Source: Lama guanicoe
Lineage: Eukaryota
Assembly: GCA_013239625.1 (NCBI GenBank)
Contig: MU055549.1
Coordinates: 496,001-560,000, forward strand
Direction of reading: 5' to 3'
DNA: 64,000 nucleotides
This document shows, one piece after another, positions 1 to 56,791 of the stretch. The position numbers and the translations under genes were made by a program. Position 1 is the first letter of the stretch, and each line of letters begins with the position of its first letter. The notes beneath the pieces are model-generated. The model saw only the letters and a list, made by a program, of their open reading frames with translations, was not told where the DNA came from and did no database searches.

Positions 1-1146
1 CTGGCCGACGGCCCTTCGGTTTCAAAGCCAGACAGAGCTCGGTCTGAGGGGCTGGGCGTCCCCAACCCCTCGCACAGGCCACTGCCTCACATTGGCAGCA
101 GCTGCCCCTCACGGGGACCACCCGCGTGGGGCCGTCTCGGGATCCCTGGTGAAAGTTTCCCAAACACCCAAGTCCCCCCGCCCCGGCCAGCGTCCAGGGC
201 AGCCTCTGGCCGAGGCGTGAGCCACCACGAGCCGTCGCTCTGGGGAAGCCCAGCCAGTGGCTCGCGCTCTTTGAGCTCAGGTGATGCCCTGGAGACGGTG
301 GCAGGTCAGACGGCTTTGAGCAGCTGGTGCCCAGGCTCAGGGCCACGCAGGCCCATGGGAGCCGGGCTCTTGCCAATGGCCGATTTGGATTCAGTCTTGG
401 TTCAGAAAGTGGCAGGGTAGAGCCAGCGGAACACTGACTGTGAGGACAGCCGCCCGGTGATGGGGGCAAGCACAACCTTGTCTCCAGGAGCCGAGATTGC
501 TCCTGGACGGGGAGTGAGACGGCCTCCTGCTGTGGCCCGGACAGACTGAGCCCCGGACAGACTGAGCCCCCAGGCTTTCCCGGGCTCGGGGCTCTGGGAG
601 GAGGTCTCCGGCTCCCGCCAGCCCCAGGTCCGTTCCTGCCACATCCACCTCGAACCCTCCTGGCCCGAGGAAGCAATGGGGACGGCTGGCTGGAGTGGGG
701 GCTCCTTTCCAAATCCGCCTGCCACTGGCCAAAAGGCCCAGGCTGCTTGGTCACCTTGAGACCAGCAGGTGAGGGTGACTTGGCTCCCTCTTAGGTCTCC
801 AAGACCCATGAATGAGCCGAAGCCAAGACCAGGGTGCTGACCCACCACAGAGCCGTCTCCATGCGCGCCCACCCACAGAGGGCGCAGGGGTCTCCCAGCG
901 GCAGCTCAGCACACAGGAGGGCACGCCCAGCATGCAGACAGACGCAGGCCTGCCTGCACTGCCCCTGCACCCCGTCCCTGGGCACCCACCCCAACACAGC
1001 GCCCCACCCCAACCCCTGCCACCTGGGCCATCGGGTCATCCTCGGGCCCCAAGTATCCTCGTGGCCAGTTTGCCGAGACCCCTGGAAGGAGGTCTAGGGC
1101 CGGGGGCTCTAGTAGCCGGAGGTGGCCAGGCACGTGTGCTCGGTAC

Positions 1147-1292
1147 CTGAGCAGGGGCTGCTTGGGGTACGGTGGCTGGTCTGTCCCCGGGCACAGGGGG
1201 GCCTTCTTGGTCACCTGCTTGTAGATGTTCCTGGCGGTGACTCCAATCCACAGCATGGTGGACAGCGTGGAGTAGTGCAGCACGATGCCCAC
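1147..1292 (-). CDS. ADGRA1: ADGRA1 (GPR123) internal coding exon, TM3-ICL2 ([49 protein letters not shown]); gene continues left of the window
   Basis: 146 bp exon with acceptor ctcttccccccag|GTG and donor CTCAG|gtaccg. Its phase-0 start matches the previous exon. The peptide is recognised as ADGRA1 TM3. Confidence 0.96.
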
Positions 1293-4200
1293 CTGGGGGG
1301 AAGAGGGCCAGTGAGCCCACCGCGGCACGCCTCCCCAGGTCCCAGCCGCCATGCTTCGCGTCCTTCGGGGACACCTCAATGGTGAGAGGGAGGGAGACTG
1401 GGAGGAGCCCCAGGGTTCTCGGGGCAGACGCCACCCTGCACAGGGGCCTACGGGCTCCTGGAGACATGTGGGTCCTGGAACAGGGCAGCCTCGCTGTCCT
1501 GCAGGGAGGTGGGGGCGGGGCCCGCGGGCCGTCCTGCGAGGTGAGCACACGCTCCCCGCTCACGGCCCCTGCACACGTATACACATCTGTCTCAGTGCCG
1601 GTGCCCAGCCCCGCGGTCTCCCAGACGCCCTGCAGGTGAGTGAGACGCCCTGGGGATCGGAGGCTGAGGTCCACTCCCTGCCGGGCGAGTGGCTCGTTAC
1701 TATGGAAACAGCCCAGCCGCCCATGGCCGGCGGCACTGCATTAGCTAGTTACACACTCCACACTCCTGCCTCCATCCGATCCTGAGGTTACCGTTGAAGT
1801 AACGACCTGCCACTTCAGAATGACAAGTAAAATCTGGCTGTAGATGGAAAGGATGTAAATGTTTAAGGAACACAGAGATTCTCTGAAGAAAGTAAGATTG
1901 CACCATTGTAATGATTTATCAAATCCAGAGTTCAATTTGGACCACAGGAAGGTCTGTAGTAACTGACGGGAGTGCTGTGGGGGGTGGGAGAGCCCCGGGG
2001 CCGCTGTACGGTCTCAGGTGGTTCCCCTTGTCCGGGAGGGTCCAGCCTTTCCCTCAGCCTGGCCTGGATCTCGTCACGCGGTCGTGTGTGCCTGGTGCCT
2101 TGAGGTCACCTTCTTGCCCCGGCCTGGCCGAGAGGAGGAGGCACTGGAACCGGGGGCTAGAACTCCCTGCACCCGAAAAGGAGAAAGAGGGACCGTGTGG
2201 GCCTGGCCCTCGACGGAAGCACAGTCTGACCTCCTTTCCAGGGACAGCAGAGTGGCTGCCGTCATGTGTGGATAGAAACAGAGTCGCATCCTCTGAAGGA
2301 GCCCCAGCCTCGGCCCGCAGCTGATCCGGCCCGGAAGGCGGGGGGAAGGGGCTGTGCCCTCGCCCGTTTGCTCGGAGCCTCATCAGGCTATGCAATTTGT
2401 GGATCATGAGAAGCTGTAAAGAGCAGACCTCTGTCTCCCCGACGCCACCTCGAGGCTGGACCATGGAGAGGTCGCTGGGTTACCTCCCCGGCTGCCTGGC
2501 CATCGCCTGGCCACCCAGCCCACGCTTCTGGCCCCAGGGCCAGGGCTGACGCACAGGCCTGGGTGGGGCCTCCGGGCCTCCGGGCCACCAGGCCGCCGTG
2601 TTCCTGACGTCACGTGGCTCTTCAGCACAGCTCACAGGCATCATTTTATCACCATAACAACCATCTATTCTCTGCAGCCACCAGAGCTCTGGACCACCTC
2701 TCCGACATCGCTTCCCTGCGATGCTGAGCAACACTTGGATGGGGAAGGTTGGCCGCAGGAGTCTATTCAGGCCTCAGGCGGTGGTGAGCTGTCACTTGTC
2801 ACGGCAGGGAAAGGGCTGGGGGGAAGGCTAACGGCTGCTGACGCAGAGCCACGTTTGCTGTAAGGAGCTGGCTTGCGTGCCTCTGCCTCTGGAGGCCGAG
2901 GAGCCCAGACTCTGCTGTCACCGAGCTGGAGGCCCAGGAGGCCGACGGTGTGGTTCCGGTCTGGGCCTGAGTCCAAAGGCAGGAGGCTGAGGTCTTTCTT
3001 CCTCAGGCTTTTGTTCCTCTCAGACCCTCGTGGTGGGAGGGGCCGCTGCTGGGCGCACGTGTGCCCTCCCCAGGCCACTGGATCGGATGCTCACCGCCTG
3101 CAGCCACACCCCCGCAGACCCGCCCAGGAAGCTGTTTGACCAAACGCCTGGGCACCCGTGTTTCATCAGCTCGACATGAGGTTAACTGTCAGGCCTCCCC
3201 TCTGGGTTCTAAGCTGTGCCTCCCAGGGGTCTCTCTTCTCCAGTGAGTGGTGGGTGGGCCCGGCCCACCCTCTGTGACATTAGCCGTGTCTGCAGTGGGC
3301 GGGCAGCAGGAAAGTTCACCGAGGGCTCCTGAGGTCCCTATGGCCGCTCTGCCCCCATCGCTCCTCCTGATGCGCCCGGTGGGTTACGTCTGGCCTGCGT
3401 GCCACCGGGACCACCCTGCCGGGATGCTGTTCTCCCTGCTCCGCACGGCCGGGGCCAACGCACGTCTGCGAGTGAGCGGGTGATGCCCTGCTTCCCTCAG
3501 GAGACGCAGTCGGAAAGCCAGGCCGCAGCGACACTGGGCCCGAGCCTGCTCCTCTGGTGGTCCTGAGGTTGTCACCCCGAGGGGACCGGGTGTGTCCCAC
3601 GCTAACAGGGCCCCTGCAGATCTCGCCTCTCCAGACCCCAGGCCTGCTCGGCCCCCGCCCATCACGCACTTCGGGGTCCACCCGGCCTCCAGGAGGACGC
3701 CTGGCCTCTGGGAGCCTCTGTCTGGCTGGCGGGCTGGAGGACAGCTCCCGGCTTTGGGGGAGGGGGGGGCTCCCAGGACCACAGGACTGGGAGGGGGACT
3801 GGGCCTGGCCGTACCGTCAGGATCCCAGGGCCCCTGCTGTAGAGTCCAGCACGCAGAGTGCAGACATGAAGGTGACCATGCATTTTGCTGCTTCCAGACG
3901 GCGCCGCGCCACAGCAGGCGCTCACAGAGGACAGCGAGCTGGTTTCCCGGGGCTCCCCCCATGGTGCTTCCACGCTGTCCAGAGGCTGACAGGAGCGTGT
4001 CTACCCCTCAGCATGGCGTTCAGATATGTGCTGGTGACTTTTCTGCAGGGCCCCGGGAGCGACTTCCCGATGGGATGTCAGCCCTAAGGTGGATTTGCAG
4101 GGAAGTGACGTCCCTTCTGTGTAGAGAAGCGGGGGAGGCTGGGGCAGCGGTGCTGTCTCCGGGCCTGGCTCCTGCTTGCAGGTGGAGGGTGTGTGGGCAG

Positions 4201-4576
4201 GAGCGCACACAGAGTCTTCCCCCAGGCACCCCCGGGGCACGTGCCTTTTGGCCACTGATTTCCAGGGTGAGTCGCCAGCCACTGCTGTCTGTGCAGGTGA
4301 ACAAGTCATCTCCTGGGGACAGATGGCCACCAAGGTCAGCCGGCACACGTGGGTGTCAGGTGACAGCCTGCAGCAGCCCCCACAGCTGTCAACAAACTCT
4401 TGTTGAATTTATAGCAACCAAGGCTGTAAGGGGAGTGTGTGACTTCCTAATGCAGGCAGCTGGGACACTCCCTCCAATTGCTTCAGGCAGATAGACACCC
4501 ACCAAGGCCTTGGTAAGATGCCCTGTGGTCCTTGGGCAGCCCCCACCAAGCCCCTGCCTGGGTGCTGCAGGTGTCT

Positions 4577-4943
4577 GTCCACCTGGAGGAGACTGTGCAC
4601 CTGGAGGGGATGGTCCACCTGGAGGTGACTGTCCACCTGGAGGGGATGGTCCACCTGGAGGTGACTGTCCACCTGGAGGGGATGGTCCATCTGGAGGAGA
4701 CGGTCCACCTGGAGGGGATGGTCCACCTGGAGGAGATGGTCCACCTGGAGGAGACGGTCCACCTGGAGGTGACTGTCCACCTGGAGGGGATGGTCCACCT
4801 GGAGGGATGGTCCACCTGGAGGGGATGGTCCACCTGGAGGGACAGTCCACCTGGAGGAGACTGTGCACCTGGAGGGGATGGTCCACCTGGAGGGGAACGT
4901 GCACCTGGAGGGAACTGTGCACCTGGGGGAGACAGTCCAGCTG
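4577..4943. repeat. Minisatellite/VNTR, 20 copies of an 18-bp unit (GTCCACCTGGAGGGGATG and variants) in an ADGRA1 intron
   Basis: Units counted directly: 18 of 18 bp and 2 of 17 bp, plus a trailing GTCCAGCTG. Confidence 0.95.
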
Positions 4944-5888
4944 TGGGAATATCCACTGGGCTGAGCCAAGTAAGCGGCTGGCAAGAGGCTGGAGAGAGGA
5001 GAGCCTGGGTCCCTCGGTGTCCAGCTGCAAAGGTGCGTCGGGCTGCCTGTCCTAGACTGGCAGCTGACAGAAGGGCCTCTTCTGAGCTCCATCAGGACCG
5101 AAGGGCAGTTCATACTCCCCCTCTTTTTAAAGAAAGTTCAGGCGAGGCTGAGGGGTGGGAAGAAGACCTTTCGTGGCTTGTCCTCTCCATGCCCGGAGCC
5201 AGAGCTCCCTTTTCACGCGAGTGGGAGCAGACCTCCCCAGAGCGAGCTCCGCCGCGGGCCGTGTGGGGCGGGCGCACGTGGCTGTCTGTGGCCTGGGGCC
5301 CCGTGACCTGCCAGTGACCGAGCCCCCTCCCTGACTGGGAGCTGCACTTCCGCGGGGTCTCTCCTTCTTAACCGGAGTAGAGCTGCTTTACGGCGTTGGG
5401 CCAGCGATTCAGTCACACACACACAGACTCCTTCCCGTTCTAAGTCGTCAAGGCTGCTGACTACAGCTCCCTGCGCTGTCCACGCGCACCCGTGGGTTCT
5501 TACCTGGACCGAGGGGGCAGGGGGCCCCGTCCCACGCTTCTGCCCCACAGCCTCAGCGGGAGAGGCGGGTCGTGTCCCTAGCTCTGGGTTGAGCTCCGTT
5601 TGTTGGGCAAGGAATGTCTAGTTAACATGTCACCTTACGCCTTGGAGAAAGCTGGTCCAGTTGAAAAATAAATCAAATGACATGATCGAACGCTGGGCCA
5701 AGCTGCAGACTCACACGGGGAGAAACTGCGATGCAGACCCTGGATGCGTAAACGCCCCTTCACGAGAAACACCTGAGCAACACTCAGCTGTCATCCCGCT
5801 AGCAGGGCACTTGCCACGCGCCTCCCCTTCGGTGGGAGAGCTGACGGCCCTGCAGGTCTGCAGGGAAATGAGGGCAGGCAGCACTCAC

Positions 5889-6012
5889 CGCCTGGCACAC
5901 GGTGGGGTGCTTGGTGCGGTTGATGCCGCCGGCGAACACTGAGAAGGTCAGAGCCGCGTGGAAGCAGAAGTTCAGGAGCGCGTGCCGGCCTTTCCGGCTG
6001 ATCCGGATAGCG
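5889..6012 (-). CDS. ADGRA1: ADGRA1 coding exon, ICL1-TM2-ECL1 ([42 protein letters not shown])
   Basis: 124 bp exon with acceptor ccccgcag|C and donor GCG|gtgagt. Phase 2 in and phase 0 out, consistent with both neighbouring exons. Confidence 0.96.
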
Positions 6013-6264
6013 CTGCGGGGACGGAGAGTTCGCGTCAGGACCTGGCATCTCGGGGCGCAGTGCAGGCGGGAGCCCGCTCGCCCGAGAGCCACGTCCCGTC
6101 GGTGGGGGAAGGGGCTGAGGAGCTCAGAGCCTGGCTGAGACGGGGCCGAGAGCGACACTCCGGAAAGACCAGACTGTGGGAAGGACAGACCCTGCTGGAT
6201 CCCCCTTGGTCGGTGGCCGTGGGGTGGCTTGGTGTTAAGTCCCCTGGGGAATCTGGAGCACCTG

Positions 6265-6330
6265 CCCGTGGGACAGGTGAGGACACTGAGGCCCTGAGAC
6301 CTTGGGACTTGTCCAAGGTCACAGACAGAG
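6265..6330. mobile_element. MIR SINE core fragment
   Basis: acaggtgaggacactgaggc...gacttgtccaaggtcaca resembles the MIR core. Confidence 0.6.
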
Positions 6331-7062
6331 AGGGGAGAGAGGAAAGCCACCAGCCACGCCTCCTGGTTCCTGGGACAGAGCTCTCTCCGCTCTGAGTGGA
6401 CATCTGACACCTGGTGGCTCGGACGCACTGGAACACCCCCCCACAGCCCAGCCTCTCCCTGGACTAGGATGTGCCTGTGGCGTGTCCATGTCCACGACCA
6501 CCCCGGACCCAGTGATAGCCAGACAGACTGCTTAGCCTCTGCCTGCTGCTGTCATCGCTACCCCAGCTCCTCTGTGGCCTCAGTCGCACCCAAGCCTCCT
6601 CCCCGACCCCAGCTGTGGACATGACTCTTATTGTGGACTTCACGCTGCTGGGGGCCAGCATCCCGCCTCACATTTCTCAGTGAATCTTCATGTGATGCCC
6701 TCTCCCCAGGCAGAGGTGGCCCGGGAACCAGCTCAGCAGGAAACCAGCTGGACTCTCCTCTGGACAAAGCAGAGGCAGAGCTGCCCGAAGGGCTCTGCCG
6801 GCTGCTCCAACTGCCCAGAGTGGGGCGGCCAGGGTGCCTGGCCAGTGGAGGGGGTGGACTGCAGCTGACTGACGAGAACGGGGAGGCTGGCGTGGAGGGC
6901 GTGGCTGTCCCTGAACCTTTGGCCACCCTCGGCCACTGCCAGGCTCGCGCCGGCCTGCCACCTGTGACATCCCTCCTGGGCACTTCTTGCTACGCGAGGG
7001 CAGGGGTCTCCCAGAGGGTCTGCACTGGAAGGCGGGCGTGCGTCCAGGGCAGGGCGCCTCAC

Positions 7063-7190
7063 CTGCGGTGAAGGACGTAGGTGGCGGCGGAGGCCAGCAG
7101 GCAGAGCAGCATGACGGCGGTGCAGGCGTACACCACGGGGTGCAGGAACTCCCCGGGGGCCTGGGGCAGGGAGAGGACGGCCCTCAGATC
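7063..7190 (-). CDS. ADGRA1: ADGRA1 coding exon, short N-terminus and TM1 ([43 protein letters not shown])
   Basis: 128 bp exon with acceptor tcctctccag|GAT and donor CGCAG|gtgagg. The LHPVVY motif is typical of the ADGRA family. 40 of 42 codons end in G/C. Confidence 0.96.
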
Positions 7191-7639
7191 CTGGAGAGGA
7201 CACAGAGCAGAGCGTGACCCACGTGGCCGGGTGCCTGGGCAGACCCACTGGGCTCTCCCTCGGCCCTGGGCTCTCCCTGCGTTGGTGGGAGGATTCTCGG
7301 ATCAGGTGGGGACTTGCTGGGTCTCAGCAGAGGCGGACAGTCTGTCTGGGCAGGGGAGGACGAACACTGCCCCGGTGGGTCTGCTTCGCTGCGAACGTCT
7401 TTGTGGGCTCTGACGGCAGCTCCCGAAGGACAGTGTTTCCGCTGTGCCCGGCAGCTGGCCTCTGGCCTCTGGCCTCCTTCCCACCCAGTGCCGCTGATGG
7501 AGCCTCGGGGCACCTGCGTCTGTCAGAGGCGCTCGCTCAGCTGAGGGCACGGCTGCCCCGGAGGCCTGGATGCGGCTGCAGAGGCAGCAGCTCACATCAG
7601 ACCACCCCAGGCCCCAGGTCTGAGCCTCACACCCACCGA

Positions 7640-7905
7640 CGCTCTGCTTTTAGGGACATGGCTCAGGTGGACGAGGTCACAGGACCAGCGTCCCTGTAAG
7701 AATAGGGACAGTGGGAGCTCAAACACGGAGGAAGGGCCGCGGGCCCACATGGTGGGAAGGAGCTGTCTGCACACCAAGGAACAAGACCTCAGGAGAAAGC
7801 GGCCTGCGTGCAGCTGTGCCTTGCACGTCCAGCTCCAGGACCGCAAGAAAGAAATTCCTGTGGTTTAAGCCACCTGCCGTGTGAGACTTTGTTACTGTCA
7901 CCCTT
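7640..7905 (+). mobile_element. MaLR (MLT1-type) solo LTR fragment
   Basis: ccagctccaggaccgcaagaaagaaattcctgtggtttaagccacc...gtgagactttgttac resembles the MLT1 3' end. Confidence 0.7.
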
Positions 7906-10900
7906 GGGGACAAATGCTCCCCACTGGGTGGGTGGTCTGGCTCTCGGTGCTCAGGCCAGAGGGTGAAGTCCTTGCTTGACCCCCAGCCCAGGCCCTGAAC
8001 CCCCCACTTTGCCCCCATGGCCCCTGGGGGATGTGCCTGGCTCTGGGAGGACAGGCTGGGGGCCGTGCCCACTGGTGAGGGCTGCCAGAACCCCGGTGAG
8101 GCCCCAGAGCTGCCCCCATGTTGACCATGGGGCGGGTGGTCAGGGCGGGGCCTGCCTCTGCACTGGCCCCGTCCCCAGGCCACGGCGGTGTCCAGTGCTG
8201 ACATGCCCACCCCGGGCCAAGGGCGGCTCCAGACGCACAAGCCCCAGGCAGTAGGCACAGCTGGTGGAGCCTCCAGACCGGGAATGGGGGATGGAGAGAT
8301 GGCCGGAGAGGCTGTGGCCCGTCCACGGCAGGAGGCAGAAAGCAAGCCTGTCTGAGCCCTCAAGCTGCTTTTCTCCTGAGGGACACCTGTCATTAGCCCA
8401 GCTGAGATGACACCTTGCCAGCCAGCAGGTGCGGGATGTGCTCAGAGGGAGCCGCCCACTACCCAGTGGGGCCTCGGCCCCGACTCGGCCCCGACGCAGG
8501 GACTTTGATGAGGACGGCTCTCTGTTGTCCTGGCAACGGCTGATGGAGTCCCATCACCTGGGAAAGGCCCTGAGTGACGTGGACGCCTGGGGGCTCCTCA
8601 GCGTCTGGCTGTGCAGGGGCCCGGCTGACACGCGAAGCAGGAACAGTGTCCAGTCCCAGAGTGAGCCGACGGCCAGGGAGGCGCTGGACAGCCACTCCAC
8701 AGACCTCACCACGGCCGCCCTTGTGCTTGGGGCCCGACTGCCCACGGGCTAGGAAGTCTGACTGGCAGGTGTGGACGTGCACAGACCATCAGTGATGCCC
8801 ACCCGGACACACGGGCTGTCAGTAGGACACATGCTGCTCACAGCCCAGATCCCAGGAAACCACGAGCTCAGGAGGAAAGGCAGCCTCAAGGTGACGGGGA
8901 TGCAGAGTGTCCCCAAGGGAGACCTGGAGGTTCTGCTGGCTCCAGCCGCCTGGGGAGGCATGGCCCTGGGGCAACGGGCCTGGCACGGCTTGCAAGGACG
9001 GTTTTTCCCAGCCTCACACAATGCCTGGTGGAGCCACTGCCTAGGGCGTGAAGGCCACGGGGCCCGGTCCCGCAAGCAGGAGCCTTCGCCTGGGGAGGGG
9101 GGCCCCCATGACGGGCAGAATGGCCCAGTGGAGAACAGGCATTTTGTAAGAAAGAGTGTGCAGGGCCGGAAACACAGGCTGCCCCTCATTTCTCAGGGAC
9201 GTTCAGCTCCCACTGGCGTCAGGGACACCGGGGCGTCCTGACCCCGGCACATTGCCATCAGGGTGGCAGGAAGGGGACCCGCGGCTGAGAGTCCCAGGGC
9301 ACTTTTGCACCCGTCAGGTCGAGGGCACCAGCCTCCTGTCAGATGCAACTCAAGGCGAACATCGCGGACACCGGGTCTCCTTGGTCAAGCCCTGACCGCA
9401 AGTGGCCTTTTCGCCTGTGGTTCGTCTGAGAGCCGTCGGCTGGGAGCAAGCGGGCCCAGGTCCCACAGGCGGCCACGTGTCCTGGGCCTGTGCCCGCTCT
9501 TTTCATGGAGACGATGGTTTGTTCCTCCCGTAACATCAGCTGGGTCTGAGACCCCCTGACTCTTCACAAAAGCCCACCTTGGCTTCCGGTTTCACGTCTG
9601 CACGCGAGAGCCGCTCCAGGACCGGCCGGTGCCCCGTCCTCTCACCGACCCTATCAGGACCATGTCCTCGGTGCCCCGAGGTGAAGGGCCCAGGTGTGTC
9701 CACCTTCTCGGGGTGTCGTCATTGTGGTGTGAACACTGGGGAGCTACCTCGCTGCCCCTAAAGACCGAGGTCAGACCCCTGACTCTTGTCTGGGGTGGGG
9801 GTAGGGGCAGCGGGCGGAGAGGGGTCGAGGAAAGCTAGCCCGCGCTTCCCAAGCAGCATCCCCGCAGGGACTGGACGGCCGGGGTCCCTGTGTCCGGGAG
9901 CCATCAGCACATCTGGCCCTGGGAGGGGTGTCCAGCAGCCGGACCGTGGTGGCGGGCTCACCTCCAGACGCGTCCTATCTGCCACTTCATTCACACGCAC
10001 AGACCCTCTGTCTTAAGCCAAACAAGGGTCAGAGCTGGTTTTCCTGCAGCAGGAACGCACCCTGGAGCTTCAGTGCAGGACCAGTGTTCGCACAGCCCGA
10101 GGTCTCCCCACCTCCGGGGCTCCTGCCTTCCGGTCGAGGCCCCGGTTTTGGGGCCTCACCCAGGTGAAGGGGTCCCTGGCCCCGAGTGACTGCATCCACC
10201 ATGTATGTTTTAGAAGAAACAGATTCAATTCCATTTAGCCTCCTGGTTTTTTTTTCTTTCTCTAAATTAGAGTTATCAACAGTGCTTTCTACATTTTTAG
10301 AGGTGACATTTAAAATTCAAAGTAGGTAATGCAAAACGGAGATACGTTTTATATTTTAAAGTTCACACATGTACAAGTTCCTCTTGGAAGAATCCACCCT
10401 GCAGGTGTTCCGTGGGCAAAGTCCCTGTAATGGTCCAGCACATGGTCAAACAGCATTGAGCTGACTGCCTTCTCTGGACACGACCTTCGGGGGCTGCGGG
10501 GCCGTCAGGGCTCCTGGGACCAGTGACAGGGACGGAGTGTGCAGAGGGGTCCACAGAACCCACAGACAAGCTGGGGGCGAAGGCCACCGCCAGCCTCCTT
10601 GGCGGATGGCCGCACGCCAGCTGCCGGAGCCGCAGTCCTGCCCCCGGCTGTGGGGCTGGAGCCCACGGGTCCCGTCACTTCTGCGCCCGCAGGATGGCCG
10701 GCGGGGCTGCTGTCTCCTCTGAGAAGCCCTGGCCCCGCTGTCCGTGGAGCCTGCAGGCGGGAGCGACCCACCCAGGGCAGCAGCCCCCAGGCTGGTCTGT
10801 TCCCATTTCCCCTTTTCTGTCACGTGTTATTACGATTTTCCCCAGATGTGTCCTTGCTGGTAGGCACTGCAAATCAGCTAAACCAGGATGTCAAGAAAGC

Positions 10901-13900
10901 CGAGAAGGAGGGAGGGGAGAGGTCCACTCCGGGGTCGCTCATCCGGTCAGACAAGCTCGCGTGGCCTCTTGCAGGCCGAGGTGCGGACCATCTGCGGGCG
11001 TCCCTCCCGCGCAGCGAGGCGTCCGTGCTGGGTCTGCGGGCGGCCGGGGCGGGCAGGGCTGTCCTTCCTCCCAGTCTCGTCCCAACCAGACTGACCTCGG
11101 GGGAGCCTGCAGTCCCTTGTGTGCTGTTTAATGTGGTTCCAACCTCTCGATCTGTCAACCTTCCGGGACAGTGTCCCGGGGGGAGCAGATGCAAAAGGTA
11201 AGTAATTTACTCATTTGGAGCACAAGTTACCCTAACTGGACATTTCCGTGGCTTGTTGCTGTCTTCTGAGGATGTGTGGGCCGGCTGAAGTCTGAAGAAC
11301 TTTGGAGAAAAATACATTGAGAAATATCACGGGGGTTTCCTTCCAGACGGGAGGTCACTTGCTTAAAACTGTCAACACAGACAGAGAGGAGCCATCGGGT
11401 GGGCGATAAACTCTGCGAGAGGAAGGTAGGTTTTAGAGGTTTATAGAAATTGAAATATTGGACTGAATAAAGAGCAACAAACCGGAGGAACTCCCTGAGC
11501 CTCTGAACTGGTGTCGCGGGCGGATGCGGGCGGTGGGAGCAGCAGGTTTGGCTGGGGTCCCGCTGGCTCAGACAGAGCCCCGACGCCCTGCGGGCTCCCT
11601 CCCTCCCAGACCACCCACAGCCCCGGCCTCCAGTCTCTGCCCTGCAACCTCCCTGGTCTCTCCGGGGTTTCAACTCCACTCTTGCCTTTTGAACGTGGGT
11701 GCTTCCGTGCAGAGCAGCGGCGTCCTGAGCGTGCATGTCTGTCTTTGGGGCAGGCCTGGCCTCGCGCCCTGTCCTGGTTCCGGGCCCTGCAGGACCTGGC
11801 GAAGGATGCCCTGACACACCGAGGTCAGGCCATGCCTCCTGGGCCTGGGCCACACGGAGCAAAGCCACCAGCGAGGCCATGGTGCCACTGAGGCCCCAGC
11901 ATGAGTGAGCGGGTGGGCTCACCCTCTTTCCCGAGACAGGTGTGGCAGCACCACCGACTCAGGGAAACAGCACACGGGTTTGGACGGGTTTCCCTCCGAC
12001 TCCAGAGCCTGCCACTTTGTTCCCTTGAAGAGCACTGTGCCCTGAGCTGACAGTGAGGATCACAGAAGACTATGGGGCGCAAAGCCGCTTGCATTTTGGA
12101 ACCTGCTTGAACTTGACAGCTGGCAGCACCATCGCGGGAACAGCCGTGCAGGTCAGCCCCTGACAGCAGCTGTGGTCAGTGCTGGGCGGGTGGGCGGGGG
12201 TGTGAGGCCTGGGATCTAAGGGGTGTGAGGCCTGGGCTCTGCCTGCTGGAGATGGGGCTGCAGCCCCCCAGCCCCCCGGGGCGGCGCCGGGAACTCACCA
12301 TCCTGCGGGCGCCGAGGGCACGCAGGCGGCGTGTTCAGAAGGTGCGTGGGGCACCAGCAGTCCCACAGGAAATCGCCCAGAGAGCAGCGTGGTTTCAGCT
12401 TTGGTCGTACCTGCTGGCGACCACGGCGTCTTTACAACTGGGGGCCGGAGGCGCCTTGTCCGACCACAGGGGTTGGGGCAGCTCACCACCAGGGCCAAGC
12501 GGGTGGTGGGAGTGTGGCAAGGCCAGAGCCAGCCCTGCTGGTTCTCCTCCCCTCGTGCCCCAGGGCCACGGGCAGCCGCCCAGGTGTCTACACCTCAGAC
12601 TCTCAGACGCGCTCAGGAAAGTGCTTGCAGCCGAGCTGCAGCCCACATGCCAGGCTGGGCATTCTCTGTCCTTCCGGAAAGCCTCTCCAGCGTAAGTGTT
12701 ACTTGTCAGGAATAAAAGCTCAGCGCACAGCTGAGATTCCAAACTCTCCGGGCGAGGGTAGCCCAGCTGATTCCCGCAGTCTTGACGGGCCTGCGTGGAG
12801 TGGGCTGGGGGCCGGGGTGGGGAGAGGGTGGGACGGACTCGAGGAGGAGGGCCCCCAACCGGGGCCGCCCGGCGGTTCTCATGGGAGGGCCAAAGGGTCA
12901 GACAGGAGGTGGAGACGGGGCTGATGCTGGGGAGGACAGCGCACATGCGCAGGGCCCGAGGGGCCGTGCTGGCCCCCTGCCCTGACCTCTGGCTCACCCT
13001 TCATCTGCCAGTGACAAGGACCCATTTTGCAAACGAGGATCCAAATGTGAGGATACAGAACCTCGGACACGGCTGCCCCAGAGGCCTGGACGTGCTGGGG
13101 GCAACAGGTGGCTGGCTCGGGTCACCGAGCTGGAGGTGCAGCTGGGCTGTGCCTGGAACGTGACCCTCAGGCCTCTGAGAGGCTGGCGCCGGCCCCCAGC
13201 CTGCGGGCCGGGGGGCAGCTCTGCGGGCAGCGCTGACCTCTGGCTAAAAGCTTCTCCCTTGTTTTGACATTTCAAATTGAACAAGAAGATGCACCGGTGA
13301 CTCAGAACCCCTCCTTGTGGGGAGTCGCATCTGCCCCAGCGACTCGCCGTCGTTGTCCGAGCCTCGGCCACCTTGGCCTCCCTGTCCTCCGGCCATCGGC
13401 ATTCCCCGCACGCGCTGGCCGCTGTCCCTCACACACACACGCATACACACAATGCATTATTTACAGGCGTCAGCCTTTCCGGAATCCAAGCGGGGGGGCA
13501 GCACAGGAAGTGCCCCTGCCTTCAGGACGAGCCCCCCCCGCTGCTCATGGTGGCCGCACCCCCTTCTCTGGAGAGAGACCCGACCTCCAAGCTCGGCGTC
13601 CCTGCAGCGGAAGCCCACCCACATCCCCTGCCATCAGTTCAGCCAACTTTTTGGGGGAAGGGGCCGGCAGGGCTGCGGTGGGCAGCCGCGTGTGGAGCCT
13701 AGGGGCCGGAGTGGGAGGCGCCCAGCCCGGGGCCGGAGGAAGCTTTCACAGGTCACAGCCTGGGGTGGGGGCAGGACGCCGTCTCCCGTGAAGCCAGTGA
13801 GTCAACGCTGCAGCCTGCCGGCACCTCATTAGTATGGTCTGTGAGCAGCCAGCAGAAGGTCCACTGGGCGAGGGCAGCCTGGAGCCCCAGCCCCTGCCCG

Positions 13901-13972
13901 CAGCCTGGCACGGGGCAGTTCCTGCTCCTGCCCGGGGCCCGTGCGGGGGTGGGCGGCCCCGCACGTACTCAC

Positions 13973-13975
13973 CAT
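13973..13975 (-). CDS. ADGRA1: ADGRA1 start codon (last 3 nt of exon 2)
   Basis: CTC ATG|gtgagt spliced to the 7190 acceptor gives M-DL..., matching the known MDL N-terminus of mammalian ADGRA1. Confidence 0.9.
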
Positions 13976-14165
13976 GAGCACAGAGAAGTCACTGAGGTGT
14001 GAGCAGGGGGTGGAGGTGGCGCCGCCCGCCCGGCCGATTATGTTGCACCCTTCTCCCCTCCAGCTTCCATGGCCGTCTGGAAGGTCAAGGTCCCGAACAG
14101 CGGCCACGGGGACGAGCCCCTGGCGACCGCGGTGGGGCGGGCAAGGGTGGAGAGGCCTCCCCCAT
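13976..14165 (-). pseudogene. ADGRA1: ADGRA1 exon 2 5'UTR portion, a vestigial GAIN/GPS-coding exon
   Basis: Acceptor cctgaccctgccctgtcttcgcag|AT. In frame with the ATG it reads GLVPVAAVRDLDLPDGHGSWRGEGCNIIGRAGGATSTPCSHLSDFSVLM, collinear with the GPS region of ADGRA2/ADGRA3 as recalled. Confidence 0.88.
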
Positions 14166-14830
14166 CTGCGAAGACAGGGCAGGGTCAGGTGGGGGGTCCC
14201 CCTCCGCAGGGGACCCCCAGCATGGCCGGCAGCACCTCCCAAAGTTGGCCCCCACCTTGGCTCCTCTCCACCAGCCAGCCTGTTGGAGTGTCTGTCTCGG
14301 GCCCGTCTGGGCAGGAGAGGTTCCGGGCCAACCTGGGCCTCAGGGCCTCGGAGGGACCTGGCCCACAGCCACACGCTGCGCGGGGACCCTTCCTTCCCCG
14401 TGTTTGAAACCCCACCTCTGCTCACCATCCCAGCACAAGACACTCAACCCAGTCTTGGGCTGCAAGAAACACGCACGGCCTGCCTGTCAGTTTAAATCAA
14501 GGGAGTCAACAGAGCTTGAATTAATCTCCCAGGGAACAGCCAGCCCGGGCGGACGGAAGCCTCTGCTGCCTGGACGTGGCTGGACCTCAGGGGCTGTGTC
14601 CCCCCACAGACTGAGTCCTTTGGCGGCTCCGGGCCATCAGTGGAACCCAAAGTTATCCAGAATCTGCACTCGGAACAGCAGGAATCGCCTCCCTGGCTTG
14701 GCGCCCAGGAAGCGGCCAGGGAGTGGACACCACGGCCAGTGGGCTCCGAGCTTGCCTCCCCGGGCCCTGTCGCTGCCTCACTGGGGCCCACCTGCCACAA
14801 ACCCCGGAGACGCACAGCCCAACTTCTCAC

Positions 14831-15050
14831 CTATTTTGGTGAAAACAGCTGGAGTGGCCACGGTCCTGTGCCTCCCGTTGGCGGCGAGCCGCGGTGAGTT
14901 CTCGGGTCTGGGGAGCAGTTTTCCATCCCAGAGGCAGCGCTCTGGAGCCTGCAAGTGGAGTTATCAACAGATTGCAGGACCGCAGCCCAGCGCCGGCCGG
15001 GGCTCTGCACCCCGGAGGATGAGTCAGAGCCAGGAGCAGCCGACATTCAG
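14831..15050 (-). pseudogene. ADGRA1: ADGRA1 exon 1 (5'UTR; 5' end uncertain), a vestigial GAIN exon with a frameshift
   Basis: Donor ATAG|gtgaga at 14831/14830. Reads VLQSVDNSTCRLQSAA /frameshift/ WDGKLLPRPENSPRLAANGRHRTVATPAVFTKI-G, like the recalled ADGRA3 segment DDSLYKLQLIAFRNGKLFPATGNSTNLADDGKRRTVVTPVILTKID. Confidence 0.82.
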
Positions 15051-15310
15051 TGCAATTCTCAGCAGGCAGCTTCCCGAACTCTGCGTGAGGACTGCCAGCG
15101 GCCGCTGCGCCTGCTCCCGCGGGCGGCGACGGTCAGGGACGAGGGATGGTCGGAAGCAGGAGCCGTAACCATGGGGATGGGGGAGGCGCTGATGGCGCGG
15201 CGCGGTGGCCGGCTCCCTGCGGCAGGGCCGGAATGGTTCGTCCCAGCCAGCCCGCTGCCAGCCTGCCGCCCGTCACAATGCAGAGACGATTTAAAGAGAC
15301 AACCGAAGGT
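15050..15310 (-). promoter_or_regulatory. CpG-dense putative ADGRA1 promoter/TSS region
   Basis: Dense CpG cluster directly upstream of exon 1, with an X-box-like GTAACCATGGGGAT (15165-15178) and a TTTAAA box near 15290. The TSS cannot be placed from sequence alone. Confidence 0.55.
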
Positions 15311-18300
15311 TTTGCCTTTGCTTCCAGCAGAGTCGGGCACCTCACATTAAAGCACGTCCCCGAGAGGACGCAGGAGGAGGCCTGGTGTTTTTGTTTCACT
15401 CTCAGAGGAAATCCCGTCCATCTAGGGCTCCGACAACAGACACACGAACAAGGAAATTGATTCTGGAGACGTTTTCACAGTCCTCGTATTAAAATGTTCT
15501 CAAATCCAAATACGGCCACACCGAGGTGAACACACGGGTCGGTGCCAGCGTGAGTCAGCAGGGTCCTCCTGCCAGTGTGGACGGCCTCAGCCATGCAGAA
15601 AGAGCCCCCGCAGACCCCTGCCCGGTTCAGGGTCCCAGCCCCCAGCCTGGGTGGCAGAGACCAGTGACAGGGCGTCAAGAAGAGGCAGCAGGTGGAGGGA
15701 AGGGCCCACAGTGGGGGGGGGGAGGGGGCCAAGGCCCAGCCAGCGGGACCTCTTGGTGGGGCATTCCCAGCCCTCCTGTCCCTCATCCCACCCAGTATTC
15801 CTGACGCTCCATGTCCCTGACCCTCCTGACTTTCCCGTTGCCCTTCTGTGGGCTGCTGTGATGGGTCCTGAACTTCTGACGAGGGACACGAAACCCCAAG
15901 GGGTGAAGTGACTTTCCAGTTGCCCAGAGACTGGGCATCAAGGCTGGGTGGAGACCCTCCCGCCCCAAGCCCGGCCCCGGAGTCCTGGCACTGCTCCCTC
16001 AGGGGCTGGAGGGCTCATGGAGCTCCCTGGGGACCCAGTGGGTGGTCCTGGGCAAGTGGGGTTTGGGGCAGTTGGGAAGGCCCACCCTGACCTGGGGGGC
16101 ATTCTGCTCAGACTCCCCCAGGCTGGGTGGTCCCCACGGACCCGTGCCCACCTACAGGTCCCTTCGCAGACTCCAGGGCAGGGGCACAGGTGAGCACAGG
16201 GCAGCCCCTTGCTGCCGGCAGGGGCTCCCAGCCCGGAGATGACAGAAAGACGGGCGTGAGCTGCCTGGCACGGGGCCCTGTACCGCAGCAGCAGCAGGGC
16301 ACGGAGGAGAGGCCGTGCCGGGGGCTGTCCCTCTGCCCTGTGCACAGTCTCCTGTCTGACCCTGCGCCCTCTCCCCTAGAGGCTGTGACCTGCCCTGGCC
16401 TCAGAGCAGGTGGGGGCCGGGACCAGTGGTGGCTTCTGGGAGAACTTGCAGGAGGTGTGTGCGGGTGCAGAGAGACAGGGAGGGGTGGCCTGGAGGAGCA
16501 CCCCCCGCCCAGGCCCCAGTGCTGCCCTGTGGGCCCGGGGCTGCGGCCCACAGGCCCCAAAGGCTCACCAAGACCAGACTCACCAGGGGTCCAGGGGGAT
16601 GCATGGGGGGCCTTGAGGGTTTTGGGGCCCTGGGGTCTGAGTGGGGTACACAGAGGGCCTGTGTGCTTCGGGGGTCCCCCAGAGGGGACTTCAGGCAGAC
16701 AGGCCTGTCTGACTACCACCATCCTGACCTTGCATTTGGGGGCCTGGACCTGGGGGCAGCTGGCCCCCTGGATCCCAGTGTTAGTTTGGGTAGGGGGGCG
16801 TCTCTCGGGAAGGGAAACTGGGCCTCGGGCTTTGTGAGTGGTCGGGGTGCCCAGCCCTCCTCACAGCTGCCCCGCCAGCCCCTCCTTGGGCTTGGACGAC
16901 CCGCCCCCAGGCCTCTGAGCTGCCTGCGGAGGGGATGTGGGCCCAGCGGTCCTCACGCTGCCCCACAGTGTCGAGCTCTGTACTCAGCACAGGGCTGCGC
17001 CTGCGAGGTGGGGAGACTGAGGCCGCAGCTGTCAGCTGCTTCACCGGCCCCCGTGTTAGCGGCAGAGCCAGGCTGGGGAGAGCGGCCACCGAGGCCGCCC
17101 TGGGCCTTCAGAGGCTGGCGCTGCTGGGAGCCTCAGGCCTTCTGCCTCCTGCGGTGACAGCCGCAGCTCAGAGGGCCCACAGGGACCCCTGTGGACCGGG
17201 TTGCGTCCTGGGTGTCGTGGACACTGCACCCTCCCTTTGTTGCTGGGCCTCAGGTGGCTGTGGCCAGGTGTGCCCCTGGCTGCCTTCTGCCTCGAGCCCC
17301 GTGTGGAAATAGCATCGTGGGCCCCGAGCTGTCGTCCATCAGCAAATGGAGCCTCTGCTTTCTGGAATCTGCAGCTGACCACGGGAGACAGCTTCAGTGC
17401 ACCTCTCGCCCTTTACAATCTACTGGCACACTGAAGACTCACCTTCTGAACAAGGTATTCGTGAAGCACAGGCCTCCCACTGGCACCGAGAACTCACTCC
17501 TGAAACGTGTTTGGCTTGACTTATTTCACAGCCGTAAGACAAGTGTCTAGCAGACTGCGGCTCCCGGTCCCTCGCTGCGCTGAGTCTCCACCTACCTCCT
17601 GAAGAGGCTAGTTTCTGGCACATGCAGAGCTCAGGACTCGCGGCCACAGAGGTCTTCCCAGCGCAGGCGGGGCTTGGCCATCAGGGCAGCAGCCCTGACC
17701 TCCTCTCTGCAGCCCCCAGCACTTTATGCGGCTTCCCTCTGATGGAAAGTCACTTCTGAGGCAGAGGTGACCGGCAGCTTCTGCTGGGGTGTTGGGGGTT
17801 GTGTGTGGCCGGGACAGCCGCTCAGGGGCAGCCTGGGGCTTGCAGCATGGGCCCACCTTGTCCCAACAGGAACCTCGGGCAGAGAGCCAGCTGCTGCCCC
17901 ACCCAGGCTGGAGGCTGGAGGTCCTGGTCCCCAGGCCCAGGACACGTGTGTGGAGACGAGCCAGTTTCTCTCTGCGCCTTTAGACCTCGGGAACCTGCAG
18001 GCTGCTCGTGTGAAGACTGGAATGGCCAGGGGACGATGCTGGGATCAAGGGTCGGATGGTGGATGGGGGGTCAGCTCAGGGAGATGCGGGCACTCCTTCC
18101 TTTCCCTGGACGCATGTCTGGCCCCACCTCCCCGTGCAGGAGCTCACTGAAGACGCAGCAGTGGCGGTGGGAACAGCCTCCGGCGGGCTGCTGGGTCTCA
18201 AGCTGGACTCGCCCCCTCTATGGACACTTTAGGGATCCTCGGGGCAGCTCACTTTCCGGCCGTTTCCTGGGGAGTCTGACAGCCTGAGGTGGGAGCTGTC

Positions 18301-56760: not shown

Positions 56761-56791
56761 NNNNNNNNNNNNNNNNNNNNNNNNNNNNNNN
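56761..56791. other. Assembly gap (31 N)
   Basis: Run of n characters. Confidence 0.99.

What the first reader, a model, noticed from the sequence alone, without database searches (positions are those of the whole stretch)
14140..15050. Exon 1 is a second fossil GAIN exon, and its splice to exon 2 rebuilds TKI-D-G
Seen: exon 1 ends TTC ACC AAA ATA G|gtgaga and exon 2 begins cag|AT GGG, so splicing gives F-T-K-I-D-G. Upstream it reads DGKLLPRPENSPRLAANGRHRTVATPAVFTKI, and one frame over VLQSVDNSTCRLQSAA. Recalled ADGRA3: DDSLYKLQLIAFRNGKLFPATGNSTNLADDGKRRTVVTPVILTKIDG. At least two frameshifts break the ancestral frame: one near 14930, and one near 14115-14125 where the junction frame runs on to TAA at 14038 instead of into the GPS. 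Inference: a new promoter arose in or just before an internal GAIN exon, truncating an LRR-Ig-HormR-GAIN ectodomain, while two coding exons and their intron were exapted as 5'UTR.
Basis: partly seen in the sequence, partly recalled or inferred. Interest (0 to 1): 0.88.

Follow-up and report, generated by a model that had tools for sequence, protein, structure and literature searches.

The report
Second fossil GAIN exon, ADGRA1 leader
The first, non-coding exon of this mammal's ADGRA1 gene is the decayed remnant of a coding exon of the extracellular GAIN domain, which platypus, birds, frogs and fish still use, so it shows how the one adhesion receptor without that domain lost it.

Summary

- **Gene and splice:** the gene is ADGRA1 (GPR123) on the minus strand. 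Exon 1 ends ...ATA G|gtgaga at 14831 and exon 2 starts cag|AT GGG at 14165. RNA contigs from two studies of a closely related organism carry exactly this joint.
- **Homology:** a profile of 18 ADGRA1 ectodomains scores 25.2 bits on 14927-14829 and 7.2 bits on 14986-14942. It scores 40.9 bits on the GPS exon. Everything else in the window scores 0.7 bits or less, and the best of 30 shuffles is 6.2.
- **Closest relatives:** the fossil is closest to ADGRA1 of platypus and birds (20/32 and 10-11 of 11-13 residues), not to ADGRA3 or ADGRA2.
- **Frameshifts:** the old frame is broken by a net 1-nt loss at 14941-14928 and a net 16-nt loss near 14122-14120. A lynx gene model shows the same frame relations.
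- **Dating:** platypus and echidna keep a long LRR-Ig-HRM-GAIN ADGRA1, so the loss came after the monotreme split.
- **Limits:** no other ectodomain fossil lies in the 49 kb upstream. Whether the promoter is new or an old internal one was not tested.
- **Earlier work:** this scan already reported the neighbouring GPS exon (s1-859686). The papers I searched describe neither fossil.

The parts
14831..15143 (-). Exon 1 as transcribed. This is the minimum extent; the true start is not defined.
   Evidence: RNA contigs X4 (14831-15143) and X3 (14831-15117) are joined to exon 2. A local CpG o/e peak of 0.81-0.83 lies at 15000-15499.
14942..14986 (-). Fossil piece A (AAVLQSVDNSTCRLQ). It corresponds to GAIN subdomain-B residues 611-625 of bird and turtle ADGRA1.
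   Evidence: HMM 7.2 bits at profile positions 610-624. Identity is 10/11 to bird, 11/13 to platypus and 11/12 to gar.
14928..14941 (-). Frameshift 1. There are 14 nt where orthologues have 15 nt (five codons, F-I-V-F-R), a net loss of 1 nt.
   Evidence: Profile positions 625-629 are unmatched between the two collinear hits, which lie in different frames.
14832..14927 (-). Fossil piece B (DGKLLP...RTVATPAVFTKI). It corresponds to residues 631-662 of bird ADGRA1 and 475-506 of platypus ADGRA1.
   Evidence: HMM 25.2 bits. Identity is 20/32 to platypus, bird and caecilian ADGRA1, 16/32 to ADGRA3 and 10/32 to ADGRA2.
14166..14830 (-). Intron 1 (665 nt, GT..AG), taken to be the ancestral phase-1 intron between the last two GAIN exons.
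   Evidence: The joint 14831->14165 is present in contigs of X3 and X4. Two fish gene models break right after FTK(L/I): one reads G-K-R, as expected from G|GTAAG read-through (P0211), and one skips on with E (P0040).
14123..14165 (-). Start of exon 2 in the junction frame: D-G, then a weakly recognisable linker.
   Evidence: The split codon is GAT. D-G follows this motif in 178 of 182 homologues. The linker alone is not significant: 7/15 to gar and 4/14 to caecilian.
14120..14122 (-). Site of frameshift 2. From D-G to the W of G-G-W there are 107 nt here against 123 nt in tetrapod orthologues, a net loss of 16 nt.
   Evidence: The frame changes between the junction frame and the GPS frame. 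Codon counts come from orthologues.
13976..14122 (-). Fossil GPS part of exon 2, ending in the present start codon ATG (13978-13976). It is the subject of the sibling finding.
   Evidence: Pfam GPS E 6.5e-6, 27 bits, cutoff 22.5. HMM 40.9 bits. Identity is 26/49 to platypus and bird.
7066..7190 (-). Exon 3 ([15 protein letters not shown]...; TM1). Its ends are approximate.
   Evidence: Motif search. tblastn E 1e-15 to orthologues.

Best explanation
Exon 1 of this ADGRA1 gene contains the remnant of the second-to-last coding exon of the ancestral GAIN domain, and exon 2 is the remnant of the last one, the GPS exon. The recognisable part of exon 1 is 14986-14832.

In the ancestor the two exons were read in one frame across a phase-1 intron (...F-A/T-K-I | D-G-C...). 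They continued across a phase-0 intron (...A-V-L-M | D-L-K...) into the 7TM exons.

In the lineage leading to placental mammals, transcription came to start just upstream of this exon, the upstream LRR-Ig-HRM-GAIN-A exons dropped out of the message, and the two exons stopped being translated. They then picked up a net 1-nt and a net 16-nt loss.

Their splice sites stayed in use, so they survive as a spliced 5' leader. Translation now starts at the Met codon that used to end the GPS/tethered-agonist strand.

Shown here: the homology, its statistics, the frameshifts, use of the splice, intact long ADGRA1 in monotremes and non-mammals, and the exon boundary after ...VLM in orthologues. Inferred: the order of events, the origin of the promoter, and that the main ORF starts at 13978.
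For: Sequence and frames.

Statistics:
- HMM scores of 25.2 and 7.2 bits on exon 1 and 40.9 bits on exon 2. The rest of the window scores 0.7 or less and shuffles reach at most 6.2.
- tblastn E 5e-8 and 5e-12 with the bird protein.

Orthology:
- The pieces score highest against ADGRA1 of platypus, bird, turtle, caecilian and gar. They score lower against ADGRA3 and much lower against ADGRA2.
- They carry tetrapod states such as RTVATPAVF and K-I, where fish have RSVSTPVAF and K-L.
- They are collinear and in order with the TM1-TM3 exons.

Placement in GAIN: in the bird protein, Pfam puts HRM at 350-403, GPS at 687-731 and 7tm_2 from 755. The fossil matches 611-662, which falls in GAIN subdomain B (domain layout per PMC3321182).

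Splice use: contigs of X3 and X4 carry the joint and show no indels over the frameshift sites.

Exon boundaries in orthologues:
- P0110 against P0071, and P0236, place the 5' boundary before N-(A/S/T)-V-A-V-A-S.
- P0211 and P0040 break after FTK(L/I).
- Many isoforms break after VLM.

Dating:
- Platypus has a 1142-aa ADGRA1 and echidna a 1302-aa one, with a GAIN region aligning at 100% coverage.
- The lynx model P0043 reads both exons with the same frame relations as here.
Against: - Pfam finds nothing in the exon-1 frames. This is weak evidence, because Pfam also finds no GAIN family in the intact bird and platypus proteins apart from the GPS motif.
- The 5' third of the old exon (about 15037-14987) and the linker after D-G are not recognisable on their own.
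- The RNA evidence comes from assembled contigs of a related organism, not raw reads of this one. The X3 contig runs on into what looks like intron 2, so it may derive from partly processed RNA.
- No upstream ectodomain fossil was found. If decay were simply neutral, one might expect some within 49 kb.
Confidence: 0.9

Rival explanations
1. The promoter is not new. ADGRA1 already had an internal promoter at or near this exon in non-mammalian vertebrates, giving N-terminally truncated isoforms. The placental lineage merely lost the long form, and the fossil exons are what is left of the short transcript's first exons.
For: - A Solea ADGRA1 model (P0236, 813 aa) starts with a private first exon spliced onto exactly this exon.
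- Denticeps Ensembl isoforms P0113 and P0114 start at or just before M-DLKK, with no GAIN.
- Several frog and bird models of 881-886 aa begin inside the GAIN region.
- A survey of human transcripts reports 6 different 5' start exons for ADGRA1 (PMC11039983).
Against: - These are automatic gene models, and some may simply be incomplete.
- Here exon 1 is the old exon extended at its 5' end into the former intron (contigs reach 15143), not a separate upstream exon as in Solea.
- No transcription-start data were available.
Confidence: 0.3
2. The exons are still coding here. A longer ADGRA1 isoform with a partial GAIN domain is made, and the apparent frameshifts are assembly errors or are bypassed.
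For: - The frame that leads into the GPS frame is open through most of exon 1.
- A lynx annotation (P0043) translates both exons as an N-terminal extension.
Against: - RNA contigs from a related organism agree with the window over both frameshift sites, without indels.
- The open frame in exon 1 is not the GAIN frame and has no ATG.
- The only ATG-started ORFs in the leader end in stops at 14833-14831, 14087-14085 and 14040-14038.
- The lynx extension is an out-of-frame reading of the fossil. It reads CNLLITPLA where the GAIN frame reads LQSVDNSTC.
Confidence: 0.03
3. The similarity is chance in GC-rich DNA, or the piece was copied in from a paralogue (ADGRA3 or ADGRA2).
For: - The window is 60-66% G+C, which yields long open frames and many weak tblastn hits.
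Against: - The exon-1 score is about four times the best score in 30 shuffles.
- The two pieces are collinear, 14 nt apart, and sit directly upstream of the GPS exon in the right order.
- ADGRA1 orthologues score higher than ADGRA3 or ADGRA2: 95-96 against 80 and 40 for piece B, and 142-149 against 74 and 56 for the GPS piece.
Confidence: 0.01

Closest known systems
GAIN domain of full-length ADGRA1 in monotremes, sauropsids, amphibians and fish (for example platypus XP_028917167 = P0284, echidna XP_038600312 = P0321, stork-cluster bird P0248)
   Same: It is the same gene and the same two exons, with 55-85% residue identity piece by piece. The D-G after the junction and the ...VLM|DL... boundary into TM1 are also shared.
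   Different: Here the frame is broken twice, there is no in-frame start, the upstream exons are missing from the message and from 49 kb of upstream DNA, and the sequence serves as leader.
Fossil GPS exon of the same gene (sibling finding s1-859686, exon 2)
   Same: It belongs to the same transcript, has the same origin, and has decayed to a similar degree (26/49 against 20/32 identity to platypus).
   Different: Exon 2 still passes Pfam's GPS threshold and supplies the start codon. Exon 1 has no Pfam match and lies wholly in the leader.
N-terminally truncated adhesion-GPCR isoforms from internal promoters (transcript surveys such as PMC11039983)
   Same: A transcript that starts inside the ectodomain-coding part of the gene and yields a receptor without adhesion domains.
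   Different: In other adhesion GPCRs the long form coexists with the short one. Here the long form is gone and the former coding exons have decayed.
Human and mouse ADGRA1/GPR123, described as the only adhesion GPCR without GAIN or GPS (PMC12922695, PMC13178472, PMC9856511)
   Same: The protein predicted here is of the same kind: it starts [15 protein letters not shown] just before TM1.
   Different: Those papers say the domain is absent or 'likely lost'. None that I could search describes remnants of it in the leader.

Membership tests
Remnant of an ADGRA1 GAIN-domain coding exon | Significant similarity to the GAIN subdomain-B segment of intact ADGRA1 proteins | tested here: met
   HMM scores of 25.2 and 7.2 bits, against a window background of 0.7 or less and a shuffle maximum of 6.2. 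tblastn E 5e-8.
Remnant of an ADGRA1 GAIN-domain coding exon | Orthology: closer to ADGRA1 than to ADGRA2 or ADGRA3, and collinear with the gene's GPS and 7TM exons | tested here: met
   Pairwise scores and identities. The order of hits on the minus strand runs 14986 > 14927 > 14122 > 7196 > 6014 > 1334.
Remnant of an ADGRA1 GAIN-domain coding exon | Same intron position and phase as in intact orthologues or paralogues (after ...K-I/L, phase 1) | tested here: inconclusive
   The evidence is indirect. P0211 reads FTKL then G-K-R, as a G|GTAAG read-through would. P0040 skips on after LTKI with E.
Remnant of an ADGRA1 GAIN-domain coding exon | Falls inside the GAIN domain of the intact protein | tested here: met
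   It matches bird residues 611-662, between HRM (350-403) and the GPS motif (687-731). GAIN spans about 320 residues ending with the GPS motif (PMC3321182).
Functional GAIN domain | Uninterrupted reading frame joined to the 7TM domain | tested here: not met
   Net 1-nt and 16-nt losses; no in-frame ATG; GAIN subdomain A and everything upstream are absent.
Functional GAIN domain | Pfam or other curated domain match | tested here: not met
   There is no Pfam hit for the exon-1 frames at E up to 10. The test is weak: apart from the GPS motif, the intact bird and platypus proteins also get no GAIN-family hit.
5' untranslated leader exon | Transcribed, spliced to the next exon, and upstream of the start codon | tested here: met
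   The joint is present in RNA contigs of two studies. All ATG-started frames in it stop before 13978. The transcription start and the start codon were not measured.

The most novel reading that the evidence does not exclude
A GAIN-less ADGRA1 may not be a mammalian invention. An internal promoter next to this exon, and a short receptor starting at the Met that ends the GPS strand, may already exist in fish, frogs and birds beside the long form. In that case placental mammals only discarded the long form. The receptor's tethered-agonist-independent mode would then be ancient and could be tested in non-mammals.
Probability: 0.25. Interest if true: 0.6.

Novelty: new member of a known kind. Interest (0 to 1): 0.5.

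Why it matters
ADGRA1 is cited throughout the field as the single adhesion GPCR without a GAIN domain, and so without the tethered-agonist mechanism. Papers say only that the domain was "likely lost".

Two consecutive fossil exons, their retained intron and their shared frameshifts turn that statement into a concrete, datable event:
- Monotremes still have the long receptor.
- A felid and this species share the broken frames.
- The present protein starts at the last residue of the old GPS strand.

This gives a clean natural experiment for how an adhesion GPCR works after losing its ectodomain. It also gives simple markers, the two frameshifts, for placing the loss on the mammalian tree. More generally, it is a clear example of coding exons surviving as a spliced 5' leader.

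Tried and rejected
- **Pfam on the exon-1 frames:** no hit.
- **PDB sequence search with a 7TM exon:** no ADGRA structure, only a weak ADGRG1 match.
- **Further ectodomain fossils in 15200-64000:** tblastn with eight full-length proteins and a profile HMM found none.
- **Signal-peptide/LRRNT-like match at 26046-25924:** E 0.058 with the turtle protein, but only -0.8 bits with the profile, which is the noise level. Rejected.
- **Possible old acceptor at 15059-15058:** it lies 20 nt too far upstream, so I dropped it.
- **X3 contig beyond 13973:** its loose end is not exon 3. It starts GTGAGT like intron 2 and then diverges, so it says nothing about the exon 2-3 joint.
- **Joint 13892/15024 in X1 and X6:** 15 foreign letters and sides of only 18-21 nt. 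I treated it as unrelated.
- **Rfam and repeat scans of 13800-15600:** nothing.
- **Marsupial state:** no therian protein of 716-2280 aa appeared among the top 120 hits of the bird query. Shorter models are excluded by the tool's length filter, so this says little.
- **Spliced model:** Exons were searched one by one by reference. The only join was local: in one script the split-codon residue D was put in front of the exon-2 junction-frame peptide for pairwise alignment.
- **Lagerström 2007 (J Neurochem):** the paper on GPR123 evolution is not held in the library.

Full report
**What is there.** On the minus strand the window holds the 5' part of an ADGRA1 (GPR123) gene. The exons, with approximate ends for exons 3-5, are:

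| Exon | Coordinates | Content |
|---|---|---|
| 1 | 15143 or beyond, to 14831 | leader |
| 2 | 14165-13976 | leader, ends CTC ATG\|gtgagt |
| 3 | about 7190-7066 | [15 protein letters not shown]... and TM1 |
| 4 | about 6012-5886 | 7TM |
| 5 | about 1292-1146 | 7TM |

DGKLLP...RTVATPAVFTKI lies at 14927-14832 and AAVLQSVDNSTCRLQ lies at 14986-14942, one frame over. The junction frame ends at TAA 14040-14038.

**Is the splice real?** I laid contigs of four RNA runs on 13000-17000. Contigs from X3 (793 nt) and X4 (507 nt) skip 14830-14166 with GT..AG ends on the gene's strand. Both runs are from organism A and come from two different studies. The contigs extend exon 1 to 15117 and 15143, and they show no insertion or deletion in either exon.

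They differ from the window at 0 of 313 bases in exon 1 and 5 of 193 in exon 2. They therefore come from a close relative, not from the sequenced animal. They are assembled contigs, so they show that the joined form exists, but not its level or its start.

**Is exon 1 homologous to a GAIN exon?** Pfam sees nothing in the exon-1 frames, though it finds the GPS motif in exon 2 (E 6.5e-6, 27 bits). I therefore collected real relatives.

A search of the 50%-identity protein library with the TM3 exon gave long family members. Cluster look-ups and three word-index searches named them. Full-length ADGRA1 with LRR, Ig, HRM, GAIN/GPS and 7TM turns up in:
- teleosts, gar, sturgeon, bichir, sharks and chimaera;
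- frogs and caecilians;
- lizards, snakes, turtles, alligator and birds;
- platypus (1142 aa, an N-terminally partial model) and echidna (1302 aa).

Pfam on the bird protein gives LRR 73-173, I-set 237-330, HRM 350-403, GPS 687-731 and 7tm_2 from 755.

tblastn of these proteins against the window hits 14927-14832 and 14986-14942 in two frames (combined E 5e-8 with bird). It also hits the GPS exon (E 5e-12) and exons 3-5, all in gene order.

A profile HMM of 18 ADGRA1 ectodomains, run against every open stretch of all six frames, gave these scores:

| Target | Score (bits) |
|---|---|
| GPS exon, 14122-13973 | 40.9 |
| 14927-14829 | 25.2 |
| 14986-14942 | 7.2 |
| Any other stretch of the window | 0.7 or less |
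| Best of 30 dinucleotide-preserving shuffles of the window | 6.2 (mean 2.2) |

The matched residues are bird 611-662. They lie directly before the GPS motif, inside GAIN subdomain B (domain definition from PMC3321182).

**Which gene does it descend from?** Piece B has 20/32 identities to ADGRA1 of platypus, bird and caecilian, 16/32 to gar ADGRA1 and to a cichlid ADGRA3, and 10/32 to an ADGRA2. The GPS piece scores 142-149 against ADGRA1, 74 against ADGRA3 and 56 against ADGRA2.

The fossil also carries tetrapod states of ADGRA1: RTVATPAVF and K-I, where fish have RSVSTPVAF and K-L. So it is the orthologous exon of this very gene.

**The breaks.** There are two.
- Between ...C-R-L-Q (ends 14942) and D-G-K-L (starts 14927) there are 14 nt. 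All orthologues have five codons there (F-I-V-F-R). This is a net loss of 1 nt.
- From the D of D-G to the W of G-G-W, tetrapods have 41 codons (123 nt). The window has 107 nt, a net loss of 16 nt. The change of frame falls at about 14122-14120.

Inside the four pieces there is no stop codon, but in DNA of 65% G+C that means little. The linker after D-G is only faintly recognisable (7/15 to gar), and the 5' third of the old exon (about 15037-14987) is not recognisable at all.

**Intron positions.** I used irregular gene models instead.
- **5' edge of the exon:** a loach isoform that skips upstream exons (P0110 against P0071) and a sole model with a private first exon (P0236) both resume at N-(S/T)-V/L-A-V/I-A-S.
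- **3' edge of the exon:** a pikeperch ADGRA1 isoform (P0211) reads ...FTKL and then G-K-R-K. That is what reading through a donor G|GTAAGA in phase 1 gives. An ADGRA3-like model (P0040) jumps after ...LTKI to a later exon with E (G|AR).
- **D-G after the junction:** D-G follows the motif in 178 of 182 homologues.
- **The next intron:** this is well documented. After ...AVLM, several models read V-S (GTx AGx read-through) and several skip to VGIVLHYS. Some teleost isoforms use a downstream acceptor.

So the second boundary is shown in orthologues. The TKI|DG boundary is supported only indirectly.

**When was the domain lost?** Both monotremes keep the long form, so the loss is younger than the monotreme split. 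A lynx annotation (P0043) translates both exons out of frame. Its peptide matches the window's third frame (CNLLITPLA..., WKTAP......NR|WG...) with only in-frame length differences of 15 nt and 12 nt. The frame relations across both breaks are therefore the same in a felid and in this animal.

The closest named fragment to the TM3 exon is from a gray whale (96%). If so, the breaks predate the split between carnivores and even-toed ungulates.

That note (s1-859686) also says marsupials keep the domain. I could not test this: no therian protein of 716-2280 aa was among the top 120 hits of the bird query, and shorter models were filtered out by length.

Identity of the fossil to platypus is about 61% over 94 residues, while bird and platypus keep about 82% overall (76-91% by segment). 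This fits relaxed constraint since the loss.

**What is missing.** No other ectodomain remnant lies between 15200 and 64000. The weak N-terminal match at 26046-25924 is at noise level. The upstream exons were either deleted or lie further away.

**The promoter.** Exon 1 reaches at least 100 nt beyond the old exon's 5' edge, and CpG o/e peaks at 15000-15499. This fits a start site in the former intron. Whether that promoter is new is open, because fish, frog and bird annotations include short forms that start at or near this exon.

**Literature.**
- Reviews and primary papers call ADGRA1 the only adhesion GPCR lacking GAIN or GPS, or say the domain was likely lost (PMC12922695, PMC13178472, PMC12059339, PMC9856511).
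- One paper counts 84 ADGRA1 homologues with a GAIN domain in 47 species, fish plus some birds and a crocodile (PMC11697300).
- No paper I could search mentions remnants in the leader, or the monotreme state.
- Lagerström 2007 is not held.

**Verdict.** It is a new example of a known kind of event: coding exons surviving as a spliced leader after N-terminal truncation. It is of moderate interest, mainly to the adhesion-GPCR field.

Noticed in passing
window 15046-14831, 14165-14085, 14070-14038 (minus strand): The leader holds three upstream ORFs. One has 71 codons from ATG 15046, and its TAG is the last three bases of exon 1. One has 26 codons and starts with the first three bases of exon 2. 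One has 10 codons and ends at TAA 14040-14038. The main ATG (13978) has a weak -3 base (C).
   Followed up: partly
window 14831-15143 compared with its flanks: RNA contigs of the related organism A differ from the window at 0 of 313 bases in exon 1. They differ at 5 of 193 in exon 2, about 1.8% in intron 1 and 3-4.6% further out. Exon 1 looks more conserved than its surroundings, perhaps because it lies next to the promoter.
   Followed up: partly
proteins P0203, P0206, P0210, P0212-P0218 and others (teleost ADGRA1): Many teleost isoforms read ...AVLM|VLSFPPYP or ...AVLM|KVLSFPPY. They lack D-L-K(-K) right after the GPS strand, as if an alternative acceptor trims the tethered-agonist region.
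   Followed up: no
proteins P0254 (barn owl), P0270 and P0282 (lizards): Annotated isoforms join ...AVLM directly to VGIVLHYS, skipping the TM1 and TM2 exons.
   Followed up: no
window 13999-13976 compared with orthologues: The fossil GPS keeps C-S-H-L|S, close to the classical cleavage consensus. Birds, turtles and alligator have S-T-H-F|S without that cysteine, and platypus has C-T-H-F|G.
   Followed up: no
window about 4400-5110: A proline/glycine-rich minisatellite. It reads as repeated PGGPSPPGG and HLEGMV units in several frames on both strands, and lies inside an ADGRA1 intron.
   Followed up: no
window 13872-13892 and 15024-15041: Contigs of X1 (980 nt) and X6 (328 nt) touch these two short stretches with 15 other letters between them and long unlike tails. 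The origin is unknown and is probably an unrelated transcript sharing short words.
   Followed up: no
window 56761-56791: A run of 31 N, left as it is.
   Followed up: no
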